Below are positions 13,950-19,600 of a stretch of DNA of 36,579 nucleotides, piece after piece (within the stretch, counting starts at the first letter, position 1; each line of letters begins with the position of its first letter). The stretch is from assembly GCA_023334545.1 (NCBI GenBank), contig JAADVB010000196.1:1-36579 (forward strand), in the 5' to 3' direction. The position numbers were made by a program, and so were the translations under genes. The stretch is from Salisapilia sapeloensis CBS 127946. Lineage: Eukaryota > Protista > Oomycota. A model generated the notes under the pieces. That model did not search any database and was not told the DNA's origin. It saw nothing but the letters and a program-made list of their open reading frames with translations.

Positions 13950-14537
13950 TTAGTGCGGCTTGTGCATAAACTGCGTCGGCACCCACTTGTCGCCCGGATT
14001 GTCCTCGTTCATAACGTCCATGACTCGGGTTCGGATTTCATCCGCGCGAGCACGATCCGTCGAACGTAGCCAGATTTCATACCGGAACTGGTTCCCAGGT
14101 TCCTTCCGATCGCGACGGTTCTTGTGGATCACACGAACGCCAGTGATCTCGTCACCAGGGTCGATCGTCTCCCCGATGGCTCCTAGCACTAGACGTAGCC
14201 AATATTCGTCCAACTGCTCGCCCTTGACCTCCTTCCGGACAGACCATTCGGCACCCTTCTTGTTCTCCTGGTCTTCCCACTCGGGTGTGATGCCGTCTTT
14301 GAAGATGGCGTACGACTCGACTGTGCGATCCGCCATCTTCTTGCGCGTATATCCGTCGAACAAGGCCTGACTTGGCGTCGGGATGTGCTGATAATAGGCC
14401 CAGAACTGCTCGACAGAACGGAATGTCCCGAGCTTCCGAAGCTTATCTGCGTAAGATTGACCTTTGCCTACTTCACGCAGTTCCCAGATCGACCACGCCG
14501 TCTGGAGAGCATGCTCCTCCTCTGCGCTCCCGACCAT
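13950..14537 (-). CDS. EIF4E: Cap-binding translation initiation factor eIF4E family
   Basis: H.LQTAWSIW, F.SVEQFWAYY, IFKDGITPEWED..NKKG.EW, W..LVLGAIGE and EITGVRV...EIW reproduce the eIF4E Trp pattern. Confidence 0.95.
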   Translation of the reverse strand: MVGSAEEEHALQTAWSIWELREVGKGQSYADKLRKLGTFRSVEQFWAYYQHIPTPSQALFDGYTRKKMADRTVESYAIFKDGITPEWEDQENKKGAEWSVRKEVKGEQLDEYWLRLVLGAIGETIDPGDEITGVRVIHKNRRDRKEPGNQFRYEIWLRSTDRARADEIRTRVMDVMNEDNPGDKWVPTQFMHKPH

Positions 14538-14653
14538 CTTCCGATTCGTGTTTTGTTGTCGGACGGTGCTTTTATGGATCAGCCTTTAATGTCTCGATTT
14601 AAAAACGCAAGTGAGCTCGTCAAGATGGTACCGAGGAGGTACCTTGAGTCGAG
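14538..14653. promoter_or_regulatory. Inferred bidirectional promoter (116 bp) between head-to-head eIF4E and the BtuF-like fusion
   Basis: Divergent ATGs at 14537 (-) and 14654 (+). Inferred from geometry only; no motif called. Confidence 0.5.
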
Positions 14654-16606
14654 ATGACTAGACGCGTGGTCTCTTTGCTCCCATCAGCGACAGAGAACGT
14701 GTGCAAGCTTATTAGTCTTGCTGGGCCAGCTTCAAGAGCGCAGTTTGTCGGCAGGTCGCACGAATGCGATTATCCTGATACGTTGGAGGTGCAAAGGCTG
14801 CCTGTATTGACAGCTCCACGAACGCAATTTAATGGCTCGCGTAGTACGCATGACCAAGTCCAGAAGGTTTTAGGCGAACAAGCGTCTTCTTTGTACTATC
14901 TAGATGCAGACAAACTGGTAGAATTGCAGCCGGACCTTATATTAACGCAGTCTTCATGTCGAGTTTGTTCCATCGACTTGGCCTCTGTTACCAAGGCTGC
15001 TGATTCCGTGCAGCATGACGGCAATACTGTTCATACGACTCCCATTCTAGCTCTGGACCCAAAATCACTGAACGATGTACTGTTCGATCAGTTCATCCAG
15101 ATCGGTCGAGCGCTTGAACTAGATAAAGAAGCAGAGAAGCTGGTGGGAGACCATCGACAGGAACTTGATCGCTTGAAAGCGCTTGCAGACAGTGTCGAAC
15201 GAAAGCGCAAGAAGCGTGTGTTGGTCGTCGATTGGCTTGATCCTCTGTTTGTTGGCTCAAGTCGGTGGGTACAGGAAATGCTGTTGCTTGCTGGAGCAGA
15301 TATAGTAACTCGAGATCAAGTCGGGAAGGATACGATAGACATCGTAGTCATTGCGTTATGTGGCCTGTCGTTAGAAGAGACACAAGATGAGATCCAGAGT
15401 GGTCGAATCGGAAACTGGTGGAATGAAATCTTGGATAAACAGTCCAATCGACCAGACGTTTATCTTGTCGATGGCACTGCCATGTTCACTCGACCAACGA
15501 GTCGTCTACTCATCGCTCTCGAGTGGCTGGTACATATCATAAACAACATACCTGGTGCATGTATAGAGGAAGGGAGTACCTTTCCATACGTGAGTATTCC
15601 AATGGACACTATTCGTGCTCAAGACAAGAAAAAATCGATGGAAGAAGAAATCGTAGAAATCGAACGACTGCATGAAGCTGCTTGTTCTAATCAAGAGGCA
15701 ATGTACACTGATCCAAAGACAGGCTATTCAGTTCTCACTGCCCACTTCCTCCGTGAACGACAAACATGTTGTGGCAATCGATGCCGGCATTGTCCCTATG
15801 GTCACGTGAATGTCAAAGACGCCTCCAAGCGAGCTAATTCATTGCAGACGAATGTGATAATTCATCCCGGCAAGGGCCGACAGAAACACAGTGGACGTAT
15901 TGGCGGTGAGAAGCTCTGGCCGGCAGATGTCACTGATAGGTCAGCAAACGATGACCTTCTCGTTGTCTTTTGGAGTGGTGGGAAAGACTCTTTCTTAGCG
16001 CTTCGTGCAATGTATGATCAGTATGCAGAAAAAGCAAGAGGGATGCCACAGGTAGTCTTGCTTTCGACAGTCAATCCGACGGATAGCGTTGTCCCAGTAC
16101 AGAACATACCACTTGAAACGTTGGTAGATCAAGCCACAGCAATGGAACTACCTCTCTATATTGTACCAGTCGGCATGGACACTACGTACGCTCCTAAAGT
16201 ACGCCAAGCACTTGCGGAGCTACCGGAAAAACTAGCGAAGAATAATAGGAAGAAAATTACTAGTCTTGTCTTTGGTGATCTACACTTGGCAGACATTCGA
16301 ACGTGGCGAGAGGATACGTTCAGCGCAGACTACAATCTCCTTTTCCCCTTATGGAAAAAAGAGTACAAGACAGAGCTACTTCCATCGTTCGAACGTCTCT
16401 GTGCTCAAGTCGATGCCAAAGTCAGTTTGTCTGCAATTGACAATGATTTGATGCGCGTAGAGGGATGGAAAGTTGGAGATGTGTACGACTGGAAACTCGT
16501 GCAAGAAATGAATAACGAGGTAGAAACACAAGTAGACATCATGGGGGAATGTGGCGAGTTCCATACGTGTATTCTCTTGCCAGGCATGAAAGACTATTCG
16601 ATTTAA
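14654..16606 (+). CDS. Three-domain fusion: BtuF/TroA-like cobalamin-binding fold + Cys-rich DUF5522-like domain + PP-loop adenine-nucleotide alpha-hydrolase (diphthine-ammonia-ligase superfamily, bacterial type)
   Basis: N-terminal domain: RVVSLLPSATE, VGRSHECDYP, PDLILTQ..C.VC, DWLDPLF, YLVDG..MFTRP..RL..LE. Middle (about 15659-15805): YTDPKTGYSVLT...RQTCCGNRCRHCPYGH. C-terminal domain (from about 15960): FWSGGKDS, FGDLHLADIRTWRE, PLW, GECGEFHT. One 650-aa ORF with no stop. Confidence 0.88.
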   Translation: MTRRVVSLLPSATENVCKLISLAGPASRAQFVGRSHECDYPDTLEVQRLPVLTAPRTQFNGSRSTHDQVQKVLGEQASSLYYLDADKLVELQPDLILTQSSCRVCSIDLASVTKAADSVQHDGNTVHTTPILALDPKSLNDVLFDQFIQIGRALELDKEAEKLVGDHRQELDRLKALADSVERKRKKRVLVVDWLDPLFVGSSRWVQEMLLLAGADIVTRDQVGKDTIDIVVIALCGLSLEETQDEIQSGRIGNWWNEILDKQSNRPDVYLVDGTAMFTRPTSRLLIALEWLVHIINNIPGACIEEGSTFPYVSIPMDTIRAQDKKKSMEEEIVEIERLHEAACSNQEAMYTDPKTGYSVLTAHFLRERQTCCGNRCRHCPYGHVNVKDASKRANSLQTNVIIHPGKGRQKHSGRIGGEKLWPADVTDRSANDDLLVVFWSGGKDSFLALRAMYDQYAEKARGMPQVVLLSTVNPTDSVVPVQNIPLETLVDQATAMELPLYIVPVGMDTTYAPKVRQALAELPEKLAKNNRKKITSLVFGDLHLADIRTWREDTFSADYNLLFPLWKKEYKTELLPSFERLCAQVDAKVSLSAIDNDLMRVEGWKVGDVYDWKLVQEMNNEVETQVDIMGECGEFHTCILLPGMKDYSI

Positions 16607-19600
16607 TGAATCCCTATTTCATTGTCCTTAAACATCATATGCTTGATTAAATTGCTAAACTGGTCTCGAATCTTGCTGCTATCGAATGTCTCGTCTTCTC
16701 GTGTGTCAGTCAATACCATTGCACTAACCCGATTGACATCTGGGAAGAGTAATGTAGGCAGCGCATTTCTCCTTTGGTAAAGTAATCGAGGCTGAAAAGG
16801 TGGGACAGCGTCCGTTTGAAGGTTACCATATCCTTCCCATGCCGATAGAATGCCATCTCCAGCAGCCGCGGCCTCGTAGAGCTGTCGCATGAGATGCCAG
16901 TATCGAGCCCAAACAAGTGATTCTGATGCAGGGTATGCTTTGGACGAATTAGCTTCATCAGTAGATGAATCGATCTTACAATAGCGCTCGCGCCGCATAC
17001 GCTGGAAACCGACGTACCCTTCTAAAATGCAATGAAGACAGCCACATCCAGCACCTTCACAAAACCGCAGGAAATGAGTCTCTGGGAGATCTCGTGCTAG
17101 TGCTTGAAGGGTGCCAAGGAAGAAGGACCTCATGTGCGATTTCCACGTATTATCTAGACTTGAGAGGTCATTGACGATATGACGTAGCTCGCCTTCATCA
17201 TTCCAACATGCGCTATCCAAGTCGTTTTCCAAAGCAATCTGATAGAAGGTTCCCGTGTCGATGGACGAGCAACCGGTTCGACGCAGTGTTTCAGTGTACA
17301 TGAGTAGAATGTCATCTGGGTCGCGTGTTTGATCGATGGACAAGACGATTTGTGCAAACTCGGCAGACGTAAGCTGTCCATCTCCATTGACATCTCCTGC
17401 TTGAAAAGCCTCGAGTAAATGAATTTCCCTACGCTTCTTTTCATTGTGCCACTCTTCGACGACAAGTCGGAGAAGATGATCTACATTGACCAACAGGCCG
17501 GCGTTTCCATTTTCTATGGGAACTGAAGACTGAGCATTTTGAGCAATTTCCACAAGATGATCGCAAAACGTAGCAATAGACTGCTTTCGCATCGATCGAA
17601 AACATTGTTGTGCAGCGTCGTGAGCTTTCTCCAACGGCACCAACCAGGTTTCTTTGTCAGGGACAGAAACCTTTGGAACATGCATTCGCTTTCCTCGTCG
17701 CTGGACAGGTGGATGAAACGTAGAAGCGGTGGTATCGGGTGCACTCCCGGATGACCCATTTGATATCTGCTGAGTCGTTACACCAGGTCCACTAGCAGCT
17801 TCATTGCTTACGAGGCATTCGAGAAACTCAAGGTAATGTACCAAGTCCGACTTGTTCACTTCTTCAAAGCAGAAGCGGGCAAAGTACTCCACACGAATAT
17901 GCTCTGACCGATAATGCTCTACTGCACATGAAAAGGCAAGTAAGTGCATGTCGGCGATTGAAGGCAATCCATAGCTGTGTAGATTAGATTGATACACGAT
18001 TTGGGCAATAGTCAATTCCCTTTTGCGAGAATGAGAGTTAGAAGTGGACGTCGTCGTTTCTGCATTTAAAGCTCGGCGTCGATTTGCAGTTAGCATGTCT
18101 GCATAAGCATCAGCAATGCTTTTTAAGATCGTCGCAAGAGACTTTTTGGAGAATTGCAGCAATTGTTCAGCGTTCATACGCCACGAAGTAATTAATGCAG
18201 CAATTGGTCGAGGCACATTCGAGCTACTGATCTTGTGGACCTTAGCTTCTTTCTTTAAAGCTGAAATTCCAGCTGCAGCGGTGGAGGTAGTACCTACAAT
18301 TGAAGTGCGACTAGCTAAAAGAGCATCCATTGTCAGTGGTTGATTTTTTTTCCGCCCGGAAATGGATGTTCGTGTATCCTTTCGATGGTCGCCAGTAGCG
18401 CTAGACTCGTCTGGGTGCATATACATTTCCCTTTCGACTGTTTCTATGTCTTCTCCATTTGTCTGAGAGCCAACATTAAAGTGTCCAGGTTTAACAAACT
18501 CTTGCCATTCCATCGAGTCGGAAATTGCTACAACAGCATTGACTTTATTCTTGAAGTCGCTCTTGGACAACGGTGATAAAACATCATCTTTCTCATCTAC
18601 GAAGGTGCTTTCATCGCCATTCTCCTTTAATTCCTTACCGCTTTTTATGGCACTCACTAATTCACGAATACGATTTAATAACTCGTCTTCACCTTCTTTC
18701 TCCAGCAGTGCCTCTAAATCGCCTAGCAAATCTTTACTCTGTCGCAACGCTGAAAGTACAAGCGAAGTCTCTATTGTGGTATCCTCGATCATACCTTCTT
18801 CTAACATGTTTGTATGTAATTTTGATTTCCACTCATTGCTTGCAGCGTCAGTTGACTCAATAACGATGCTTTCCGCCAATAGTTTTGATTTTGATTCTTC
18901 GAGTAACTCTTCTTCTAAGACAGTTTCTGTCACTGATGTCTCCATCCCGTTTGGAACAAACGGTGTTAAAGCATCCTTTAAAAGCACCATCGTGGCAGCG
19001 TTGTCAGTATTATCACACGTCAATGTTCCGAGCAAGCTTTTGATCCATTTAATTTTAGTTTCGATGGACATTTGTGCAATGTATGGGTCAGGATCTGAAA
19101 AGTCCAATGGCTCGGTCTGTATAGTAGCGGGCATAACGTCGACGTTGGCTACGCCGCTACTTCTTGATCTAGACTCCGCGTCGTTAGAAGGACCCACTGT
19201 ATTCTCTACCCATTCGTCACGGTCGAGTAAAGGAGTTGCATTCCATAGGAGGTTCAAAAGGTTTTTCATATTACTCCCCAAAGTACCTGTGGATGTGTCT
19301 TGTAGTAACCTCTCGATCAAACTTGAGATAGTGTCCCATTGCTGATTTTGGTCACCACATCCAACTAATTCTTCAAGAAGACGCTGCATATCACCAGAAT
19401 CCAATTGAGGACAGAGAATAAAAGATATCAAGTCGTACGCTAGCGCGCTGGGAGATTTGTTTTCTTGAATGTAGTCAGATAACAGTAATTTTAAGTTTTC
19501 ACTTGACAATGCAGCAAACATTGAAGCAGCACTCTGCTTAGCACCTAGGTTTCTCTTCGACTTAAACCTTCCTTGAGCTCCCCTCATTCCTGCTTTTGAA

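What the first reader, a model, noticed from the sequence alone, without database searches (positions are those of the whole stretch)
14654..16606. Candidate cytosolic cobalamin salvage/repair module: BtuF-like binder + Cys cluster + PP-loop amide ligase in one eukaryotic polypeptide
Seen: one uninterrupted, intronless 650-aa ORF with three recognisable domains. It starts directly at RVVSLLPSATE, with no signal peptide or transmembrane segment. Known: the BtuF/TroA helical-backbone fold binds cobalamin or metal chelates in bacterial ABC uptake. PP-loop (SGGKDS) enzymes of the diphthine-ammonia-ligase superfamily adenylate a carboxylate and form an amide. Corrinoids carry several side-chain amides. 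Inference (Rosetta-stone): the binder presents a corrinoid to an ATP-dependent amidase/ligase that repairs or remodels it inside the cell, with the CCxxxCxxCPY domain as a metal or redox site. I recall bacterial homologs of these domains occurring near B12 uptake genes, but that must be verified. I know of no characterised pathway of this form.
Basis: partly seen in the sequence, partly recalled or inferred. Interest (0 to 1): 0.85.

Follow-up and report, generated by a model that had tools for sequence, protein, structure and literature searches.

The report
Cytosolic vitamin B12-handling fusion enzyme
This oomycete-like organism expresses one protein that joins a B12-binder-like domain, a small cysteine-rich module and an ATP-using enzyme domain; in bacteria the same parts are separate neighbouring genes switched by vitamin B12, so it very probably processes B12 inside the cell by a reaction nobody has yet measured.

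Summary
Window 14654-16606 (+) is an intact, intronless, transcribed 650-aa gene with three domains above Pfam thresholds: a leaderless BtuF-like binder (PF01497), DUF5522 (CCGNRCRHCPYGH) and a PP-loop DUF71 domain (SGGKDS). The fusion is conserved in oomycetes, chytrids, diatoms, prasinophyte-like picoeukaryotes and some bacteria, so it is not a chimera.

The B12 reading is supported by new evidence. The C-domain has His637 where Dph6 has catalytic Glu188, which is the published signature of the prokaryotic "DUF71-B12" clade (de Crecy-Lagard 2012). In bacteria the three domains occur as adjacent genes, split in different ways. Eight of 19 candidate loci tested carry cobalamin riboswitches (6 of the 9 with a binder gene next to DUF71), against none in 8 control loci. 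TonB receptors and a DUF6580 membrane protein recur alongside them.

The reaction itself is unknown. Side-chain amide ligation or repair is plausible but untested. The binder cleft has lost BtuF's aromatic B12 contacts and gained four conserved cysteines. Green-algal copies have lost the PP-loop.

The eukaryotic fusion, the leaderless binder family and DUF5522 (also the core of human C1orf53) are undescribed in the literature I could search. I file it as a new variant of a predicted, uncharacterised kind.

The parts
14654..16606 (+). Complete intronless gene, 650 aa, three domains
   Evidence: ORF list. RNA-run contigs match its boundaries with no gaps. Over 100 homologues share the architecture.
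14654..15583 (+). Leaderless BtuF-like (class III, helical-backbone) binder domain, residues 1-~310
   Evidence: Pfam PF01497. AF2 pLDDT about 90. Foldseek: BtuF 1n4a TM 0.79 and haem binders 0.72-0.73. 29 of the top 30 Swiss-Prot model hits are BtuF or cobalamin-binding proteins. hhalign to E. coli BtuF: 97.6%, E 3e-12.
14759..14770 (+). HECD motif (H36 E37 C38 D39), in the loop that holds BtuF Tyr50
   Evidence: Invariant or near-invariant in 40 fusions and 19 binder-only proteins. Mapping to BtuF.
14957..14968 (+). C102-x-x-C105 (CRVC), inserted just after the position of BtuF Trp85 (here Q99)
   Evidence: Invariant Q99, C102 and C105. hhalign leaves this stretch as an insertion relative to BtuF.
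15356..15364 (+). LCG with invariant C236-G237 (C-lobe cleft loop; CCG or PCG in most relatives)
15470..15496 (+). DGxxxFxRP loop; F278 and R280 correspond to BtuF F244 and R246
15671..15811 (+). DUF5522 module (helix, beta-hairpin, helix, Cys/His loop)
   Evidence: Pfam PF17653, E 1e-19. Domain model pLDDT 90. No solved relative. Same module in animal C1orf53 and others.
15767..15805 (+). CCGNRCRHCPYGH: invariant C372 C373 G374 C377 R378 H379 C380; H384 invariant among the 40 full-length fusions but not across the wider DUF5522 set
   Evidence: Alignments A1 and A4.
15962..16576 (+). DUF71 / PP-loop ATP pyrophosphatase domain
   Evidence: Pfam PF01902. Profile hits PF0828 (3RJZ) at E 2e-19. 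Foldseek hit to 2d13.
15974..15991 (+). PP-loop SGGKDS (441-446)
   Evidence: Invariant across 30 relatives. Aligns with the PF0828 SGGKDS.
16544..16567 (+). GECGEFHT; His637 replaces Dph6 catalytic Glu188 (the DUF71-B12 signature)
   Evidence: Paper PMC3541065 section 13. Alignment to PF0828. GE.GEFHT conserved in all relatives.

Best explanation
The gene encodes a cytosolic corrinoid (vitamin B12 family) processing protein. The N-terminal domain derives from the bacterial B12 binder BtuF. It has lost its export signal and holds a corrinoid, or hands one over, in a cleft remodelled with four cysteines, a His and a Glu. The C-terminal PP-loop domain belongs to the His188-type lineage of DUF71, not to Dph6. 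It uses ATP (giving AMP + PPi) to adenylate a carboxylate on the bound corrinoid and couples it to ammonia or an amine. The likeliest substrate is a de-amidated or incompletely amidated side chain, so damaged or incomplete B12 analogues would be converted to usable cofactor. DUF5522 is a small Cys4/His metal-binding adaptor that couples the two halves. Shown here: the domain identities, the cytosolic and expressed status, and the genomic link of all three parts to B12-regulated operons. Inferred: corrinoid binding by this cleft, the adenylation chemistry (by family analogy) and the identity of the carboxylate.
For: (1) Rosetta-stone evidence with regulation. In Novosphingopyxis (L015) a cobalamin riboswitch (93 bits) precedes DUF6580, a leaderless binder with the same motifs, and DUF5522+DUF71, next to a riboswitch-controlled TonB receptor. 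In Isosphaeraceae (L088) the order is riboswitch, DUF71, DUF6580, binder+DUF5522 fusion. Riboswitch operons containing binder and DUF71 genes also occur in L032, L062, L072 and L076; L077 and L089 have riboswitch, TonB receptor, DUF71 and DUF6580 but no leaderless-binder-type gene. Riboswitches were found in 8 of 19 candidate loci against 0 of 8 control DUF71 loci. (2) In L032 a canonical leader-bearing BtuF-BtuD-BtuC set lies behind a second riboswitch, so the leaderless binder is a separate paralogue. (3) The C-domain has GECGEFHT, matching the DUF71-B12 signature ENGEF/YH188. 29 of 71 stand-alone relatives have BtuF/FecCD/ABC/TonB/IcmF neighbours, reproducing the published clustering. (4) The N-domain is closest to BtuF and to haem binders and is homologous to BtuF at 97.6% probability, retaining P31, F168, F244 and R246 equivalents. 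(5) PP-loop and GEFHT motifs are intact and the gene is transcribed. (6) The eukaryotes named in the search output as carrying it (oomycetes, chytrids, diatoms, green algae; also picoeukaryote contigs that I judged Mamiellales-like from gene content alone) are B12 users to my knowledge, and no land-plant or Dikarya name appears among the hits. Unchecked notes on the same genome list MetH, MCM, MMAA, MTRR, MMAB and LMBD1. (7) A reviewer of the 2012 paper argued that PP-loop enzymes act as ligases, not hydrolases.
Against: There is no biochemical evidence for any member of the clade. BtuF's aromatic B12 contacts Y50, W66, W85 and F162 are replaced by E37, L80, Q99 and D/E193, and four conserved Cys line the cleft. 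That could mean a metal or Fe-S site rather than a corrin pocket. Most bacterial DUF5522+DUF71 loci (8 of 9), the binder-only loci L007/L009 and the Polyangiaceae full fusion show no B12 context or riboswitch. The fusion's DUF71 clade is separated from the classic B12-context clade by a strongly supported branch. Three green-lineage members have lost SGGKDS and GEFHT but keep binder + DUF5522. Animals use B12 but lack the fusion. DUF5522 also occurs alone in phages and Actinomycetota, so it is not B12-specific. No ammonia-donating domain is present.
Confidence: 0.45

Rival explanations
1. Corrinoid remodelling enzyme in the sense proposed in 2012: it replaces CbiZ, removing or exchanging the nucleotide loop or lower ligand of pseudocobalamin-type analogues so the corrin ring can be reused.
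For: Published anticorrelation of DUF71-B12 with bacterial CbiZ and its co-occurrence with CbiB. The Pedobacter operon contains a SIR2-family gene between binder and DUF71; from my own knowledge, the Sir2 homologue CobB can act in lower-ligand activation in Salmonella. Some algae do remodel pseudocobalamin, and I saw no enzyme named for removing the existing lower ligand in the passages I read.
Against: A PP-loop ATPase is an unlikely hydrolase (reviewer comment). Whether this organism has the loop-assembly genes (CobT/CobS/CbiB) needed to finish remodelling could not be checked. Carriage of the fusion does not obviously track the algae reported able to remodel; that comparison rests on my memory and was not tested.
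Confidence: 0.15
2. B12 chaperone, redox processor or sensor rather than a ligase. Binder + DUF5522 uses its thiols to ligate or reduce the cobalt (decyanation, dealkylation or hand-off, like BtuM or CblC/CblD). The DUF71 domain is regulatory or dispensable.
For: Four conserved Cys plus His and Glu sit in cleft loops. Binder + DUF5522 is retained where the PP-loop has decayed, and binder + DUF5522 exists as its own protein in L088. DUF5522 alone is conserved in animals as C1orf53. Cysteine ligation of cobalt in BtuM and in CblC-CblD is my own knowledge.
Against: In most lineages, including this window, the PP-loop and GEFHT motifs are strictly conserved, which argues for ATP-dependent catalysis. 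Unchecked notes report a CblC-like gene in this genome.
Confidence: 0.2
3. Not a corrinoid protein. The binder domain holds haem, another tetrapyrrole, or a metal or Fe-S cluster, and the PP-loop domain modifies that ligand or a protein.
For: Haem binders (BhuT, ShuT, PhuT, RhuT) score as well as BtuF in Foldseek. There is a weak NCBIfam hit to 'helical backbone metal receptor'. The cleft is Cys-rich. Many bacterial relatives lack B12 context.
Against: Cobalamin riboswitches directly precede the binder/DUF71 genes in at least five independent lineages, with none in controls. No haem or siderophore genes recur among the neighbours.
Confidence: 0.1
4. A second diphthine-ammonia ligase (Dph6 paralogue) acting on EF-2, as UniProt's automatic names suggest.
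For: Automatic names 'Diphthine--ammonia ligase'. Weak TIGR03679 hit of 27 bits.
Against: That score is far below the 197-bit cutoff. Catalytic E188 is His, and the EF-2-contact residues (S44, Y45, Y103, Q104) are not conserved. The closest relatives are bacterial, and bacteria have no diphthamide.
Confidence: 0.02

Closest known systems
DUF71-B12 subgroup of the DUF71/COG2102 PP-loop family (de Crecy-Lagard et al. 2012, Biol Direct 7:32; NCBI 'Dph6-related ATP pyrophosphatase')
   Same: PP-loop SGGKDS. His in place of Dph6 Glu188 (E-x-G-E-F-H-T). Shared GDL.LE.IR..RE and FPLW motifs. Bacterial relatives sit beside B12 uptake genes and riboswitches.
   Different: It forms a separate, well-supported clade. 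It is fused to DUF5522 and to a leaderless binder, is eukaryotic, and lacks the roughly 25-residue C-terminal extension of the stand-alone proteins. The 2012 paper describes neither the fusion nor eukaryotic members. The clade's function is still unmeasured.
BtuF, periplasmic vitamin B12-binding protein of the BtuCD-F importer (PDB 1N4A/1N2Z)
   Same: Same two-lobe helical-backbone fold (TM 0.79). Homologous by profile (97.6%). P31, F168, F244 and R246 equivalents retained.
   Different: No signal peptide, and cytosolic. Y50, W66, W85 and F162 are replaced. There are four family-specific Cys in the cleft loops. It is never next to BtuCD as its sole binder, and in L032 a canonical BtuF coexists with it.
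Dph6 diphthine-ammonia ligase (PF0828, PDB 3RJZ/3RK1; yeast YLR143W)
   Same: Same domain fold and ATP-binding PP-loop.
   Different: The catalytic Glu188 is His, the EF-2-binding residues are absent, and there are no RidA domains.
Human C1orf53 and other stand-alone DUF5522 proteins
   Same: The DUF5522 module is 46-55% identical with TM up to 0.86, with the same CCG..CRHC motif.
   Different: C1orf53 has no binder or ATPase domain and is itself uncharacterised.
CBA1, algal cobalamin acquisition protein (Sayer et al. 2023, PMC10828217)
   Same: A eukaryotic protein with a BtuF-like fold implicated in B12 handling.
   Different: CBA1 has a signal peptide, is ER or secretory-pathway associated, acts in uptake and has no enzyme domain. 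It is a different family.

Membership tests
DUF71/COG2102 PP-loop ATP pyrophosphatase superfamily (PF01902) | PP-loop SGGKDS and the overall domain | tested here: met
   Pfam 30 bits against a cutoff of 23.2. Family profile to PF0828 at E 2e-19, with SGGKDS aligned. Foldseek hit to 2d13.
Dph6 (diphthine-ammonia ligase) | EGGE/DxE188 motif with catalytic Glu188 | tested here: not met
   GECGEFHT: His637 aligns with E188.
Dph6 (diphthine-ammonia ligase) | EF-2/diphthine-contact residues S44, Y45, Y103, Q104 | tested here: not met
   Replaced by family-specific motifs (..VPVQ.., GDLHLADIRTWR) in the alignment to PF0828. TIGR03679 scores 27 bits against a cutoff of 197.
DUF71-B12 subgroup | ENGEF/YH188 signature (His at position 188) | tested here: met
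   E-C-G-E-F-H-T. GE.GEFHT is invariant in the fusions and the bacterial relatives.
DUF71-B12 subgroup | Physical clustering with B12 transport or salvage genes in prokaryotes | tested here: inconclusive
   Met for the sister stand-alone clade (29 of 71 loci) and for L015 in the fusion's own clade. 8 of 9 DUF5522+DUF71 loci lack riboswitches, and 7 of 9 lack any transport-type neighbour within 4.5 kb (L024 has a TonB receptor). Not applicable to the eukaryotic gene itself.
DUF71-B12 subgroup | Phylogenetic placement inside the bacterial/archaeal cluster 2 of the 2012 tree | tested here: inconclusive
   It falls in a distinct clade, split from the stand-alone B12-context proteins at SH-aLRT 99. 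No Dph6 outgroup was included, so sister versus nested cannot be told.
BtuF-type cobalamin-binding protein | Class III helical-backbone two-lobe fold, homologous to BtuF | tested here: met
BtuF-type cobalamin-binding protein | Export signal and partnership with BtuCD | tested here: not met
   Leaderless in all 40 fusions and in all bacterial binder-only relatives. Fused to an ATP-dependent cytosolic enzyme.
BtuF-type cobalamin-binding protein | B12-contact residues (P31, Y50, W66, W85, F162, F168, D242, R246). The list is from my memory of Borths 2002; only the residue identities at those numbers were checked. | tested here: inconclusive
   P31, F168 and R246 equivalents are kept. Y50, W66, W85, F162 and D242 are not. 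The paper itself could not be read.
BtuF-type cobalamin-binding protein | Binds cobalamin | not testable with these tools
   Needs a binding assay. Riboswitch control of the bacterial orthologues is indirect support only.
DUF5522 (PF17653) | Match to the family model, with the CCG..CRHC motif | tested here: met
   70.6 bits against a cutoff of 25. The motif is invariant in 24 sequences.

The most novel reading that the evidence does not exclude
Eukaryotes that depend on scavenged B12 possess a dedicated cytosolic enzyme that repairs or completes corrinoids by ATP-dependent side-chain amidation. That would be a B12 'proofreading' step outside the known CblC/CblD/MMAB trafficking route. Its adaptor module DUF5522, which survives on its own as human C1orf53, would then be a previously unrecognised B12-handling domain conserved from bacteria to animals.
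Probability: 0.2. Interest if true: 0.85.

Novelty: new variant of a known kind. Interest (0 to 1): 0.62.

Why it matters
Half of all algae, all oomycetes and the early-diverging fungi depend on B12 made by prokaryotes, and much of what they meet in nature is analogue or damaged cofactor. How eukaryotes other than animals process B12 after uptake is largely unknown. The DUF71-B12 family has remained a prediction, with no assay that I could find since 2012. This gene gives a single-polypeptide, soluble, intron-free and expressed version of the whole module (binder + adaptor + ATPase), which makes it an unusually convenient object for finding the reaction. The bacterial riboswitch operons found here also add two uncharacterised partners: the leaderless binder family and the DUF6580 membrane protein. 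They also tie DUF5522 to B12. DUF5522 is the only recognisable domain I found in the uncharacterised human protein C1orf53. In addition, database names calling these proteins 'diphthine--ammonia ligase' or 'ABC superfamily' appear to be wrong and could be corrected.

Tried and rejected
(1) Assembly chimera or contamination: rejected. RNA contigs match the ORF, the architecture is conserved and the neighbours are eukaryotic.

(2) Dph6 orthology: rejected on signature residues.

(3) First context look-ups, which led nowhere: the Polyangiaceae full fusion, binder-only P0103 and P0107 and three DUF5522+DUF71 or DUF71 proteins showed no B12 genes, and no riboswitch was found in four of those loci. 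Only the systematic scan of species-representative genomes revealed the riboswitch operons.

(4) A greedy ORF caller lost targets in high-GC loci. I replaced it with all-ORF clustering.

(5) Matching DUF6580 to a solved B12 transporter by sequence gave no PDB hit and no NCBIfam hit.

(6) A DUF5522 fold match in the PDB: none. The word-index search with the 62-aa domain returned a single protein, on a virus- or picoeukaryote-like contig without informative context.

(7) Literature searches for DUF5522 and DUF6580 returned no papers. Borths 2002 on BtuF is not held.

(8) I could not measure Cys-Cys distances or domain contacts, because model coordinates are not exposed. The claim that the four Cys line the cleft rests on homology mapping to BtuF loops only.

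(9) The note that this genome also has a CblC-like domain fused to an Asn-synthetase-like PP-loop enzyme could not be checked, because that DNA is outside the window.
Full report
OBSERVATION. The window holds one open reading frame at 14654..16606 on the + strand. It is 650 codons long and begins MTRRVVSLLPSATE. Pfam finds three domains, all above their curated thresholds: Peripla_BP_2 (PF01497, residues 83-222, E 1.3e-11), DUF5522 (PF17653, residues 340-386, E 1.2e-19) and Diphthami_syn_2 (PF01902, residues 437-641, E 4.7e-7).

Assembled contigs from three RNA runs cover 14644-16713, 14651-16617 and 14679-16622. They have no gaps and no differing letters. A zero-depth gap separates them from the eIF4E gene upstream, and their depth (29-41) differs from both neighbours (124-210 and 5-7). 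The gene is therefore expressed, unspliced, and has no upstream coding exon that could add a targeting peptide. The caveat is that contig ends are not mapped transcript ends. The neighbours are ordinary eukaryotic genes: eIF4E, a protein kinase, THOC5 and a large EF-hand protein.

IS THE FUSION REAL AND CONSERVED? Yes. A word-indexed search found 117 relatives, and an exhaustive HMMER search found 154 representatives below E 1e-30. Named carriers of the same three-domain architecture include:
- oomycetes (Phytophthora, Pythium, Globisporangium, Saprolegnia, Aphanomyces, Achlya), at no more than 50% identity to this protein;
- chytrid fungi (Chytriomyces, Rhizoclosmatium, Obelidium, Podochytrium);
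- a diatom (Cyclotella), a pelagophyte and green algae;
- Polyangiaceae bacteria.

An abundant marine group of 711-770 aa lies on compact eukaryotic contigs with Brr2, Arf and mitochondrial-carrier genes. In a 40-sequence alignment every member starts within a few residues of RVVSLLPSATE and none has a signal peptide. A few have short N-terminal extensions that I judged by eye to look like presequences.

THE C-TERMINAL DOMAIN. De Crecy-Lagard et al. 2012 (PMC3541065) split DUF71/COG2102 into Dph6 and a bacterial/archaeal 'DUF71-B12' subgroup. In that subgroup 75 of 102 genes were adjacent to btuCDF-type genes, and the Dph6 motif EGGE/DxE188 is replaced by ENGEF/YH188. The window's protein reads GECGEFHT. 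In a profile alignment to the Dph6 structure PF0828 (3RJZ, E 2e-19), His637 falls on Glu188, the PP-loop aligns exactly, and the EF-2-contact segment is replaced by the family motif GDLHLxxIRxWR. It is therefore a DUF71 domain of the His188 type and not a Dph6 orthologue. The automatic names 'diphthine--ammonia ligase' look wrong.

I scanned one genome per prokaryotic species with an alignment of the DUF5522+DUF71 half and kept 80 loci. Nine encode DUF5522+DUF71 two-domain proteins and 71 encode stand-alone GEFHT-type DUF71. Clustering of all neighbouring ORFs, without relying on gene calls, showed that 29 of the 71 stand-alone loci have one of the following within 4.5 kb: Peripla_BP_2, FecCD, an ABC ATPase, a TonB-dependent receptor, or an IcmF-type B12-dependent mutase. 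This reproduces the published B12 link independently. A tree of the DUF71 domain separates the stand-alone proteins from a clade holding all fusions plus the DUF5522-linked bacterial proteins, with SH-aLRT 99. The window's domain is thus a sister or sub-lineage, not a typical member. The tree has no Dph6 outgroup.

THE N-TERMINAL DOMAIN. The AlphaFold model is confident (mean pLDDT 89.2). Foldseek against the PDB puts E. coli BtuF (1n4a, target-normalised TM 0.79) and the haem binders BhuT, ShuT, PhuT and RhuT (0.72-0.75) on top. Siderophore binders score lower. Against Swiss-Prot models, 29 of the top 30 hits are BtuF or cobalamin-binding proteins, although BtuF entries are numerous there. 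A profile of the domain aligns to E. coli BtuF with 97.6% probability.

I mapped BtuF's B12-contact residues, which I recalled from memory. Their residue identities match the sequence numbering, and W66 is confirmed by PDB entry titles. The mapping gives:
- retained: P31=P10, F168=F199, F244=F278, R246=R280;
- replaced: Y50 by E37, W66 by L80, W85 by Q99, F162 by D/E193.

The family's own invariant residues lie in the same cleft loops: H36-E37-C38, C102-x-x-C105 (an insertion right after the W85 position), W194, W205 and C236-G237. The cleft is therefore BtuF-derived but chemically remodelled with four cysteines. I could not inspect model coordinates, so whether the four Cys cluster together in space is not shown.

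THE DECISIVE CONTEXT EVIDENCE. Early look-ups of individual bacterial relatives showed nothing B12-related. The systematic set did.

- L015, Novosphingopyxis baekryungensis, is the best bacterial match to the query (36% identity). A cobalamin riboswitch (RF00174, 93 bits) is followed on the same strand by a DUF6580 membrane protein. Next comes a 272-aa leaderless binder that begins MRIVSLLPSATD and carries HSC, C.VC, ACCG and FSRP. Overlapping its end is a DUF5522+DUF71 protein. A convergent TonB-dependent receptor has its own riboswitch.
- tblastn with the window's N-domain then found leaderless binders of the same subfamily (E 1e-17 to 1e-36) immediately beside stand-alone DUF71 genes in L032, L050, L056, L062, L071, L072, L076 and L088. 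A DUF6580 gene often lies between them.
- Rfam found cobalamin riboswitches on the correct strand in seven of ten such loci. In L032 and L088 the riboswitch sits directly 5' of the DUF71 gene.
- In L088 (Isosphaeraceae) the binder ORF itself ends in a DUF5522 domain, confirmed by Pfam.

DUF5522 is thus fused to DUF71 in some bacteria, to the binder in another, and to both in the window's protein. That is a three-way Rosetta stone inside B12-regulated operons.

Three further points:
- L032 also has, behind a second riboswitch, a TonB receptor, a canonical leader-bearing BtuF, BtuD and BtuC. The leaderless binder is therefore a distinct paralogue, not the importer's subunit.
- The Pedobacter operon (L062) reads riboswitch, TonB receptor, DUF6580, binder, SIR2-family protein, DUF71.
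- As a control, eight GEFHT-DUF71 loci without such neighbours (132 kb) had no riboswitch, and neither did the window.

Overall, 8 of 19 candidate loci carry riboswitches, against 0 of 8 controls. The weak side is that eight of the nine DUF5522+DUF71 loci, the binder-only loci L007/L009 and the Polyangiaceae fusion show no riboswitch. Apart from a TonB receptor next to the gene in L024, they also show no B12-type neighbour.

DUF5522. The domain model is confident (pLDDT 90): a helix, a beta-hairpin, a helix, then the Cys/His loop. Invariant residues are Y, DP, V, T, CCG and C-R-H-C. It has no solved relative; the best PDB hit has E 3.4. In AlphaFold DB clusters the same module, at 46-55% identity and TM up to 0.86, is the core of animal C1orf53. 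It is also found in Trypanosoma cruzi, Allomyces, Rhizophagus, nematodes and Chlamydomonas. Stand-alone 53-81-aa versions occur in Actinomycetota and in phages.

C1orf53 is an uncharacterised protein. A 2011 survey of diatom transporters lists the diatom homologues only as 'Uncharacterized protein C1orf53 / ABC / prokaryote origin'. I read DUF5522 as a small metal-binding adaptor. Its occurrence in phages says it is not B12-specific. That the eukaryotes carrying it are all B12 users is a lead I did not test.

MECHANISM. What is shown: three domains that bacteria co-regulate by B12 are joined in one cytosolic, expressed eukaryotic protein. Its ATPase motifs are intact and its binder descends from BtuF.

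What is inferred: the binder holds a corrinoid, and the PP-loop domain adenylates a corrinoid carboxylate and forms an amide. A reviewer of the 2012 paper made the general point that PP-loop enzymes are ligases, not hydrolases.

I favour side-chain amidation (repair or completion) over the CbiZ-like remodelling proposed in 2012. A self-contained reaction would be useful to an organism that lacks nucleotide-loop assembly genes. I could not check that this genome lacks them.

Against any purely catalytic reading, three green-lineage members keep binder + DUF5522 but have lost SGGKDS and GEFHT. The Cys-rich cleft also suggests thiol or metal chemistry on the cobalt. I put the B12 link at about 0.8 overall, and the specific amide-ligase mechanism within it at well under half.

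CONTEXT IN THIS GENOME. Unchecked notes from the same scan report MetH and MCM in tandem, MMAA, MTRR, an adenosyltransferase, an LMBD1-like protein, and a CblC-like domain fused to an Asn-synthetase-like PP-loop enzyme. If correct, the organism is a B12 user and has a second 'B12 binder + adenylating amidoligase' fusion, which would be a striking parallel. None of this DNA was available to me.

NOVELTY. The DUF71-B12 idea is published (2012) for prokaryotes and remains untested. I found no paper describing the eukaryotic fusion, the leaderless binder family, DUF5522 or DUF6580. I file it as a new variant of a known, predicted kind. It matters as a convenient single-chain entry point to an unsolved B12 reaction.

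Noticed in passing
L015:6670-7200, L062:5657-6247, L032:8960-9430, L088:8791-9240, L076:5035-5478, also L077, L089, L090: A DUF6580 (PF20221) membrane protein of about 170-196 aa recurs in cobalamin-riboswitch operons, between TonB receptors, DUF71 and the leaderless binder. It is a candidate inner-membrane corrinoid transporter. No paper mentions it, and it has no PDB or NCBIfam match.
   Followed up: partly
window 15671-15811; AFDB entries A0A3Q2GK09, A0A6J2APV1, Q4CKU6, A0A0L0S7T6, A0A2K3DP09: DUF5522 is the conserved core of the uncharacterised animal protein C1orf53. It also occurs in kinetoplastids, non-Dikarya fungi, nematodes and Chlamydomonas, all lineages that use B12. It is found in phages and Actinomycetota as well.
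   Followed up: partly
L062:7322-8005: A SIR2-family gene sits between the leaderless binder and DUF71 in the Pedobacter riboswitch operon. From my own knowledge this recalls Salmonella CobB, the Sir2 homologue first found through B12 lower-ligand metabolism.
   Followed up: no
Alignment A1: P0082 (Chlamydomonas eustigma), P0072 (Botryococcus), P0071: Green-lineage copies keep the binder and DUF5522 but have lost the PP-loop and the GEFHT motif, so the ATPase domain is decaying there.
   Followed up: partly
window 16603-16606: The gene's TAA stop overlaps the stop of the convergent 1353-aa EF-hand gene within a shared TTAA. One RNA contig runs to 16713, so the 3' UTR overlaps the neighbour's coding region.
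   Followed up: partly
window 14538-14653: Only 116 bp separate this gene's ATG from the divergently transcribed eIF4E gene (13950-14537, minus strand). RNA depth falls to zero in between and differs four- to five-fold between the two genes.
   Followed up: partly
L083:4455-7799, also L043, L052, L057, L066: IcmF-type fused B12-dependent mutase (B12-binding + MeaB + MCM) is a recurrent neighbour of stand-alone GEFHT-type DUF71 genes in 5 loci. From the passages I read, this link does not appear to be emphasised in the 2012 paper.
   Followed up: no
Alignment A1: P0033 (Saprolegnia), P0064 (Cyclotella), P0068: Some homologues carry 20-30-residue N-terminal extensions rich in Arg, Ser and Leu that look like mitochondrial presequences, which the window's protein lacks. 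Localisation may differ between lineages.
   Followed up: no
same genome, another piece (note s1-303233): An unchecked note reports a CblC/MMACHC-like domain fused to a glutaminase-less Asn-synthetase-like PP-loop enzyme in this genome. That would be a second B12-binder-plus-amidoligase fusion, if true.
   Followed up: no
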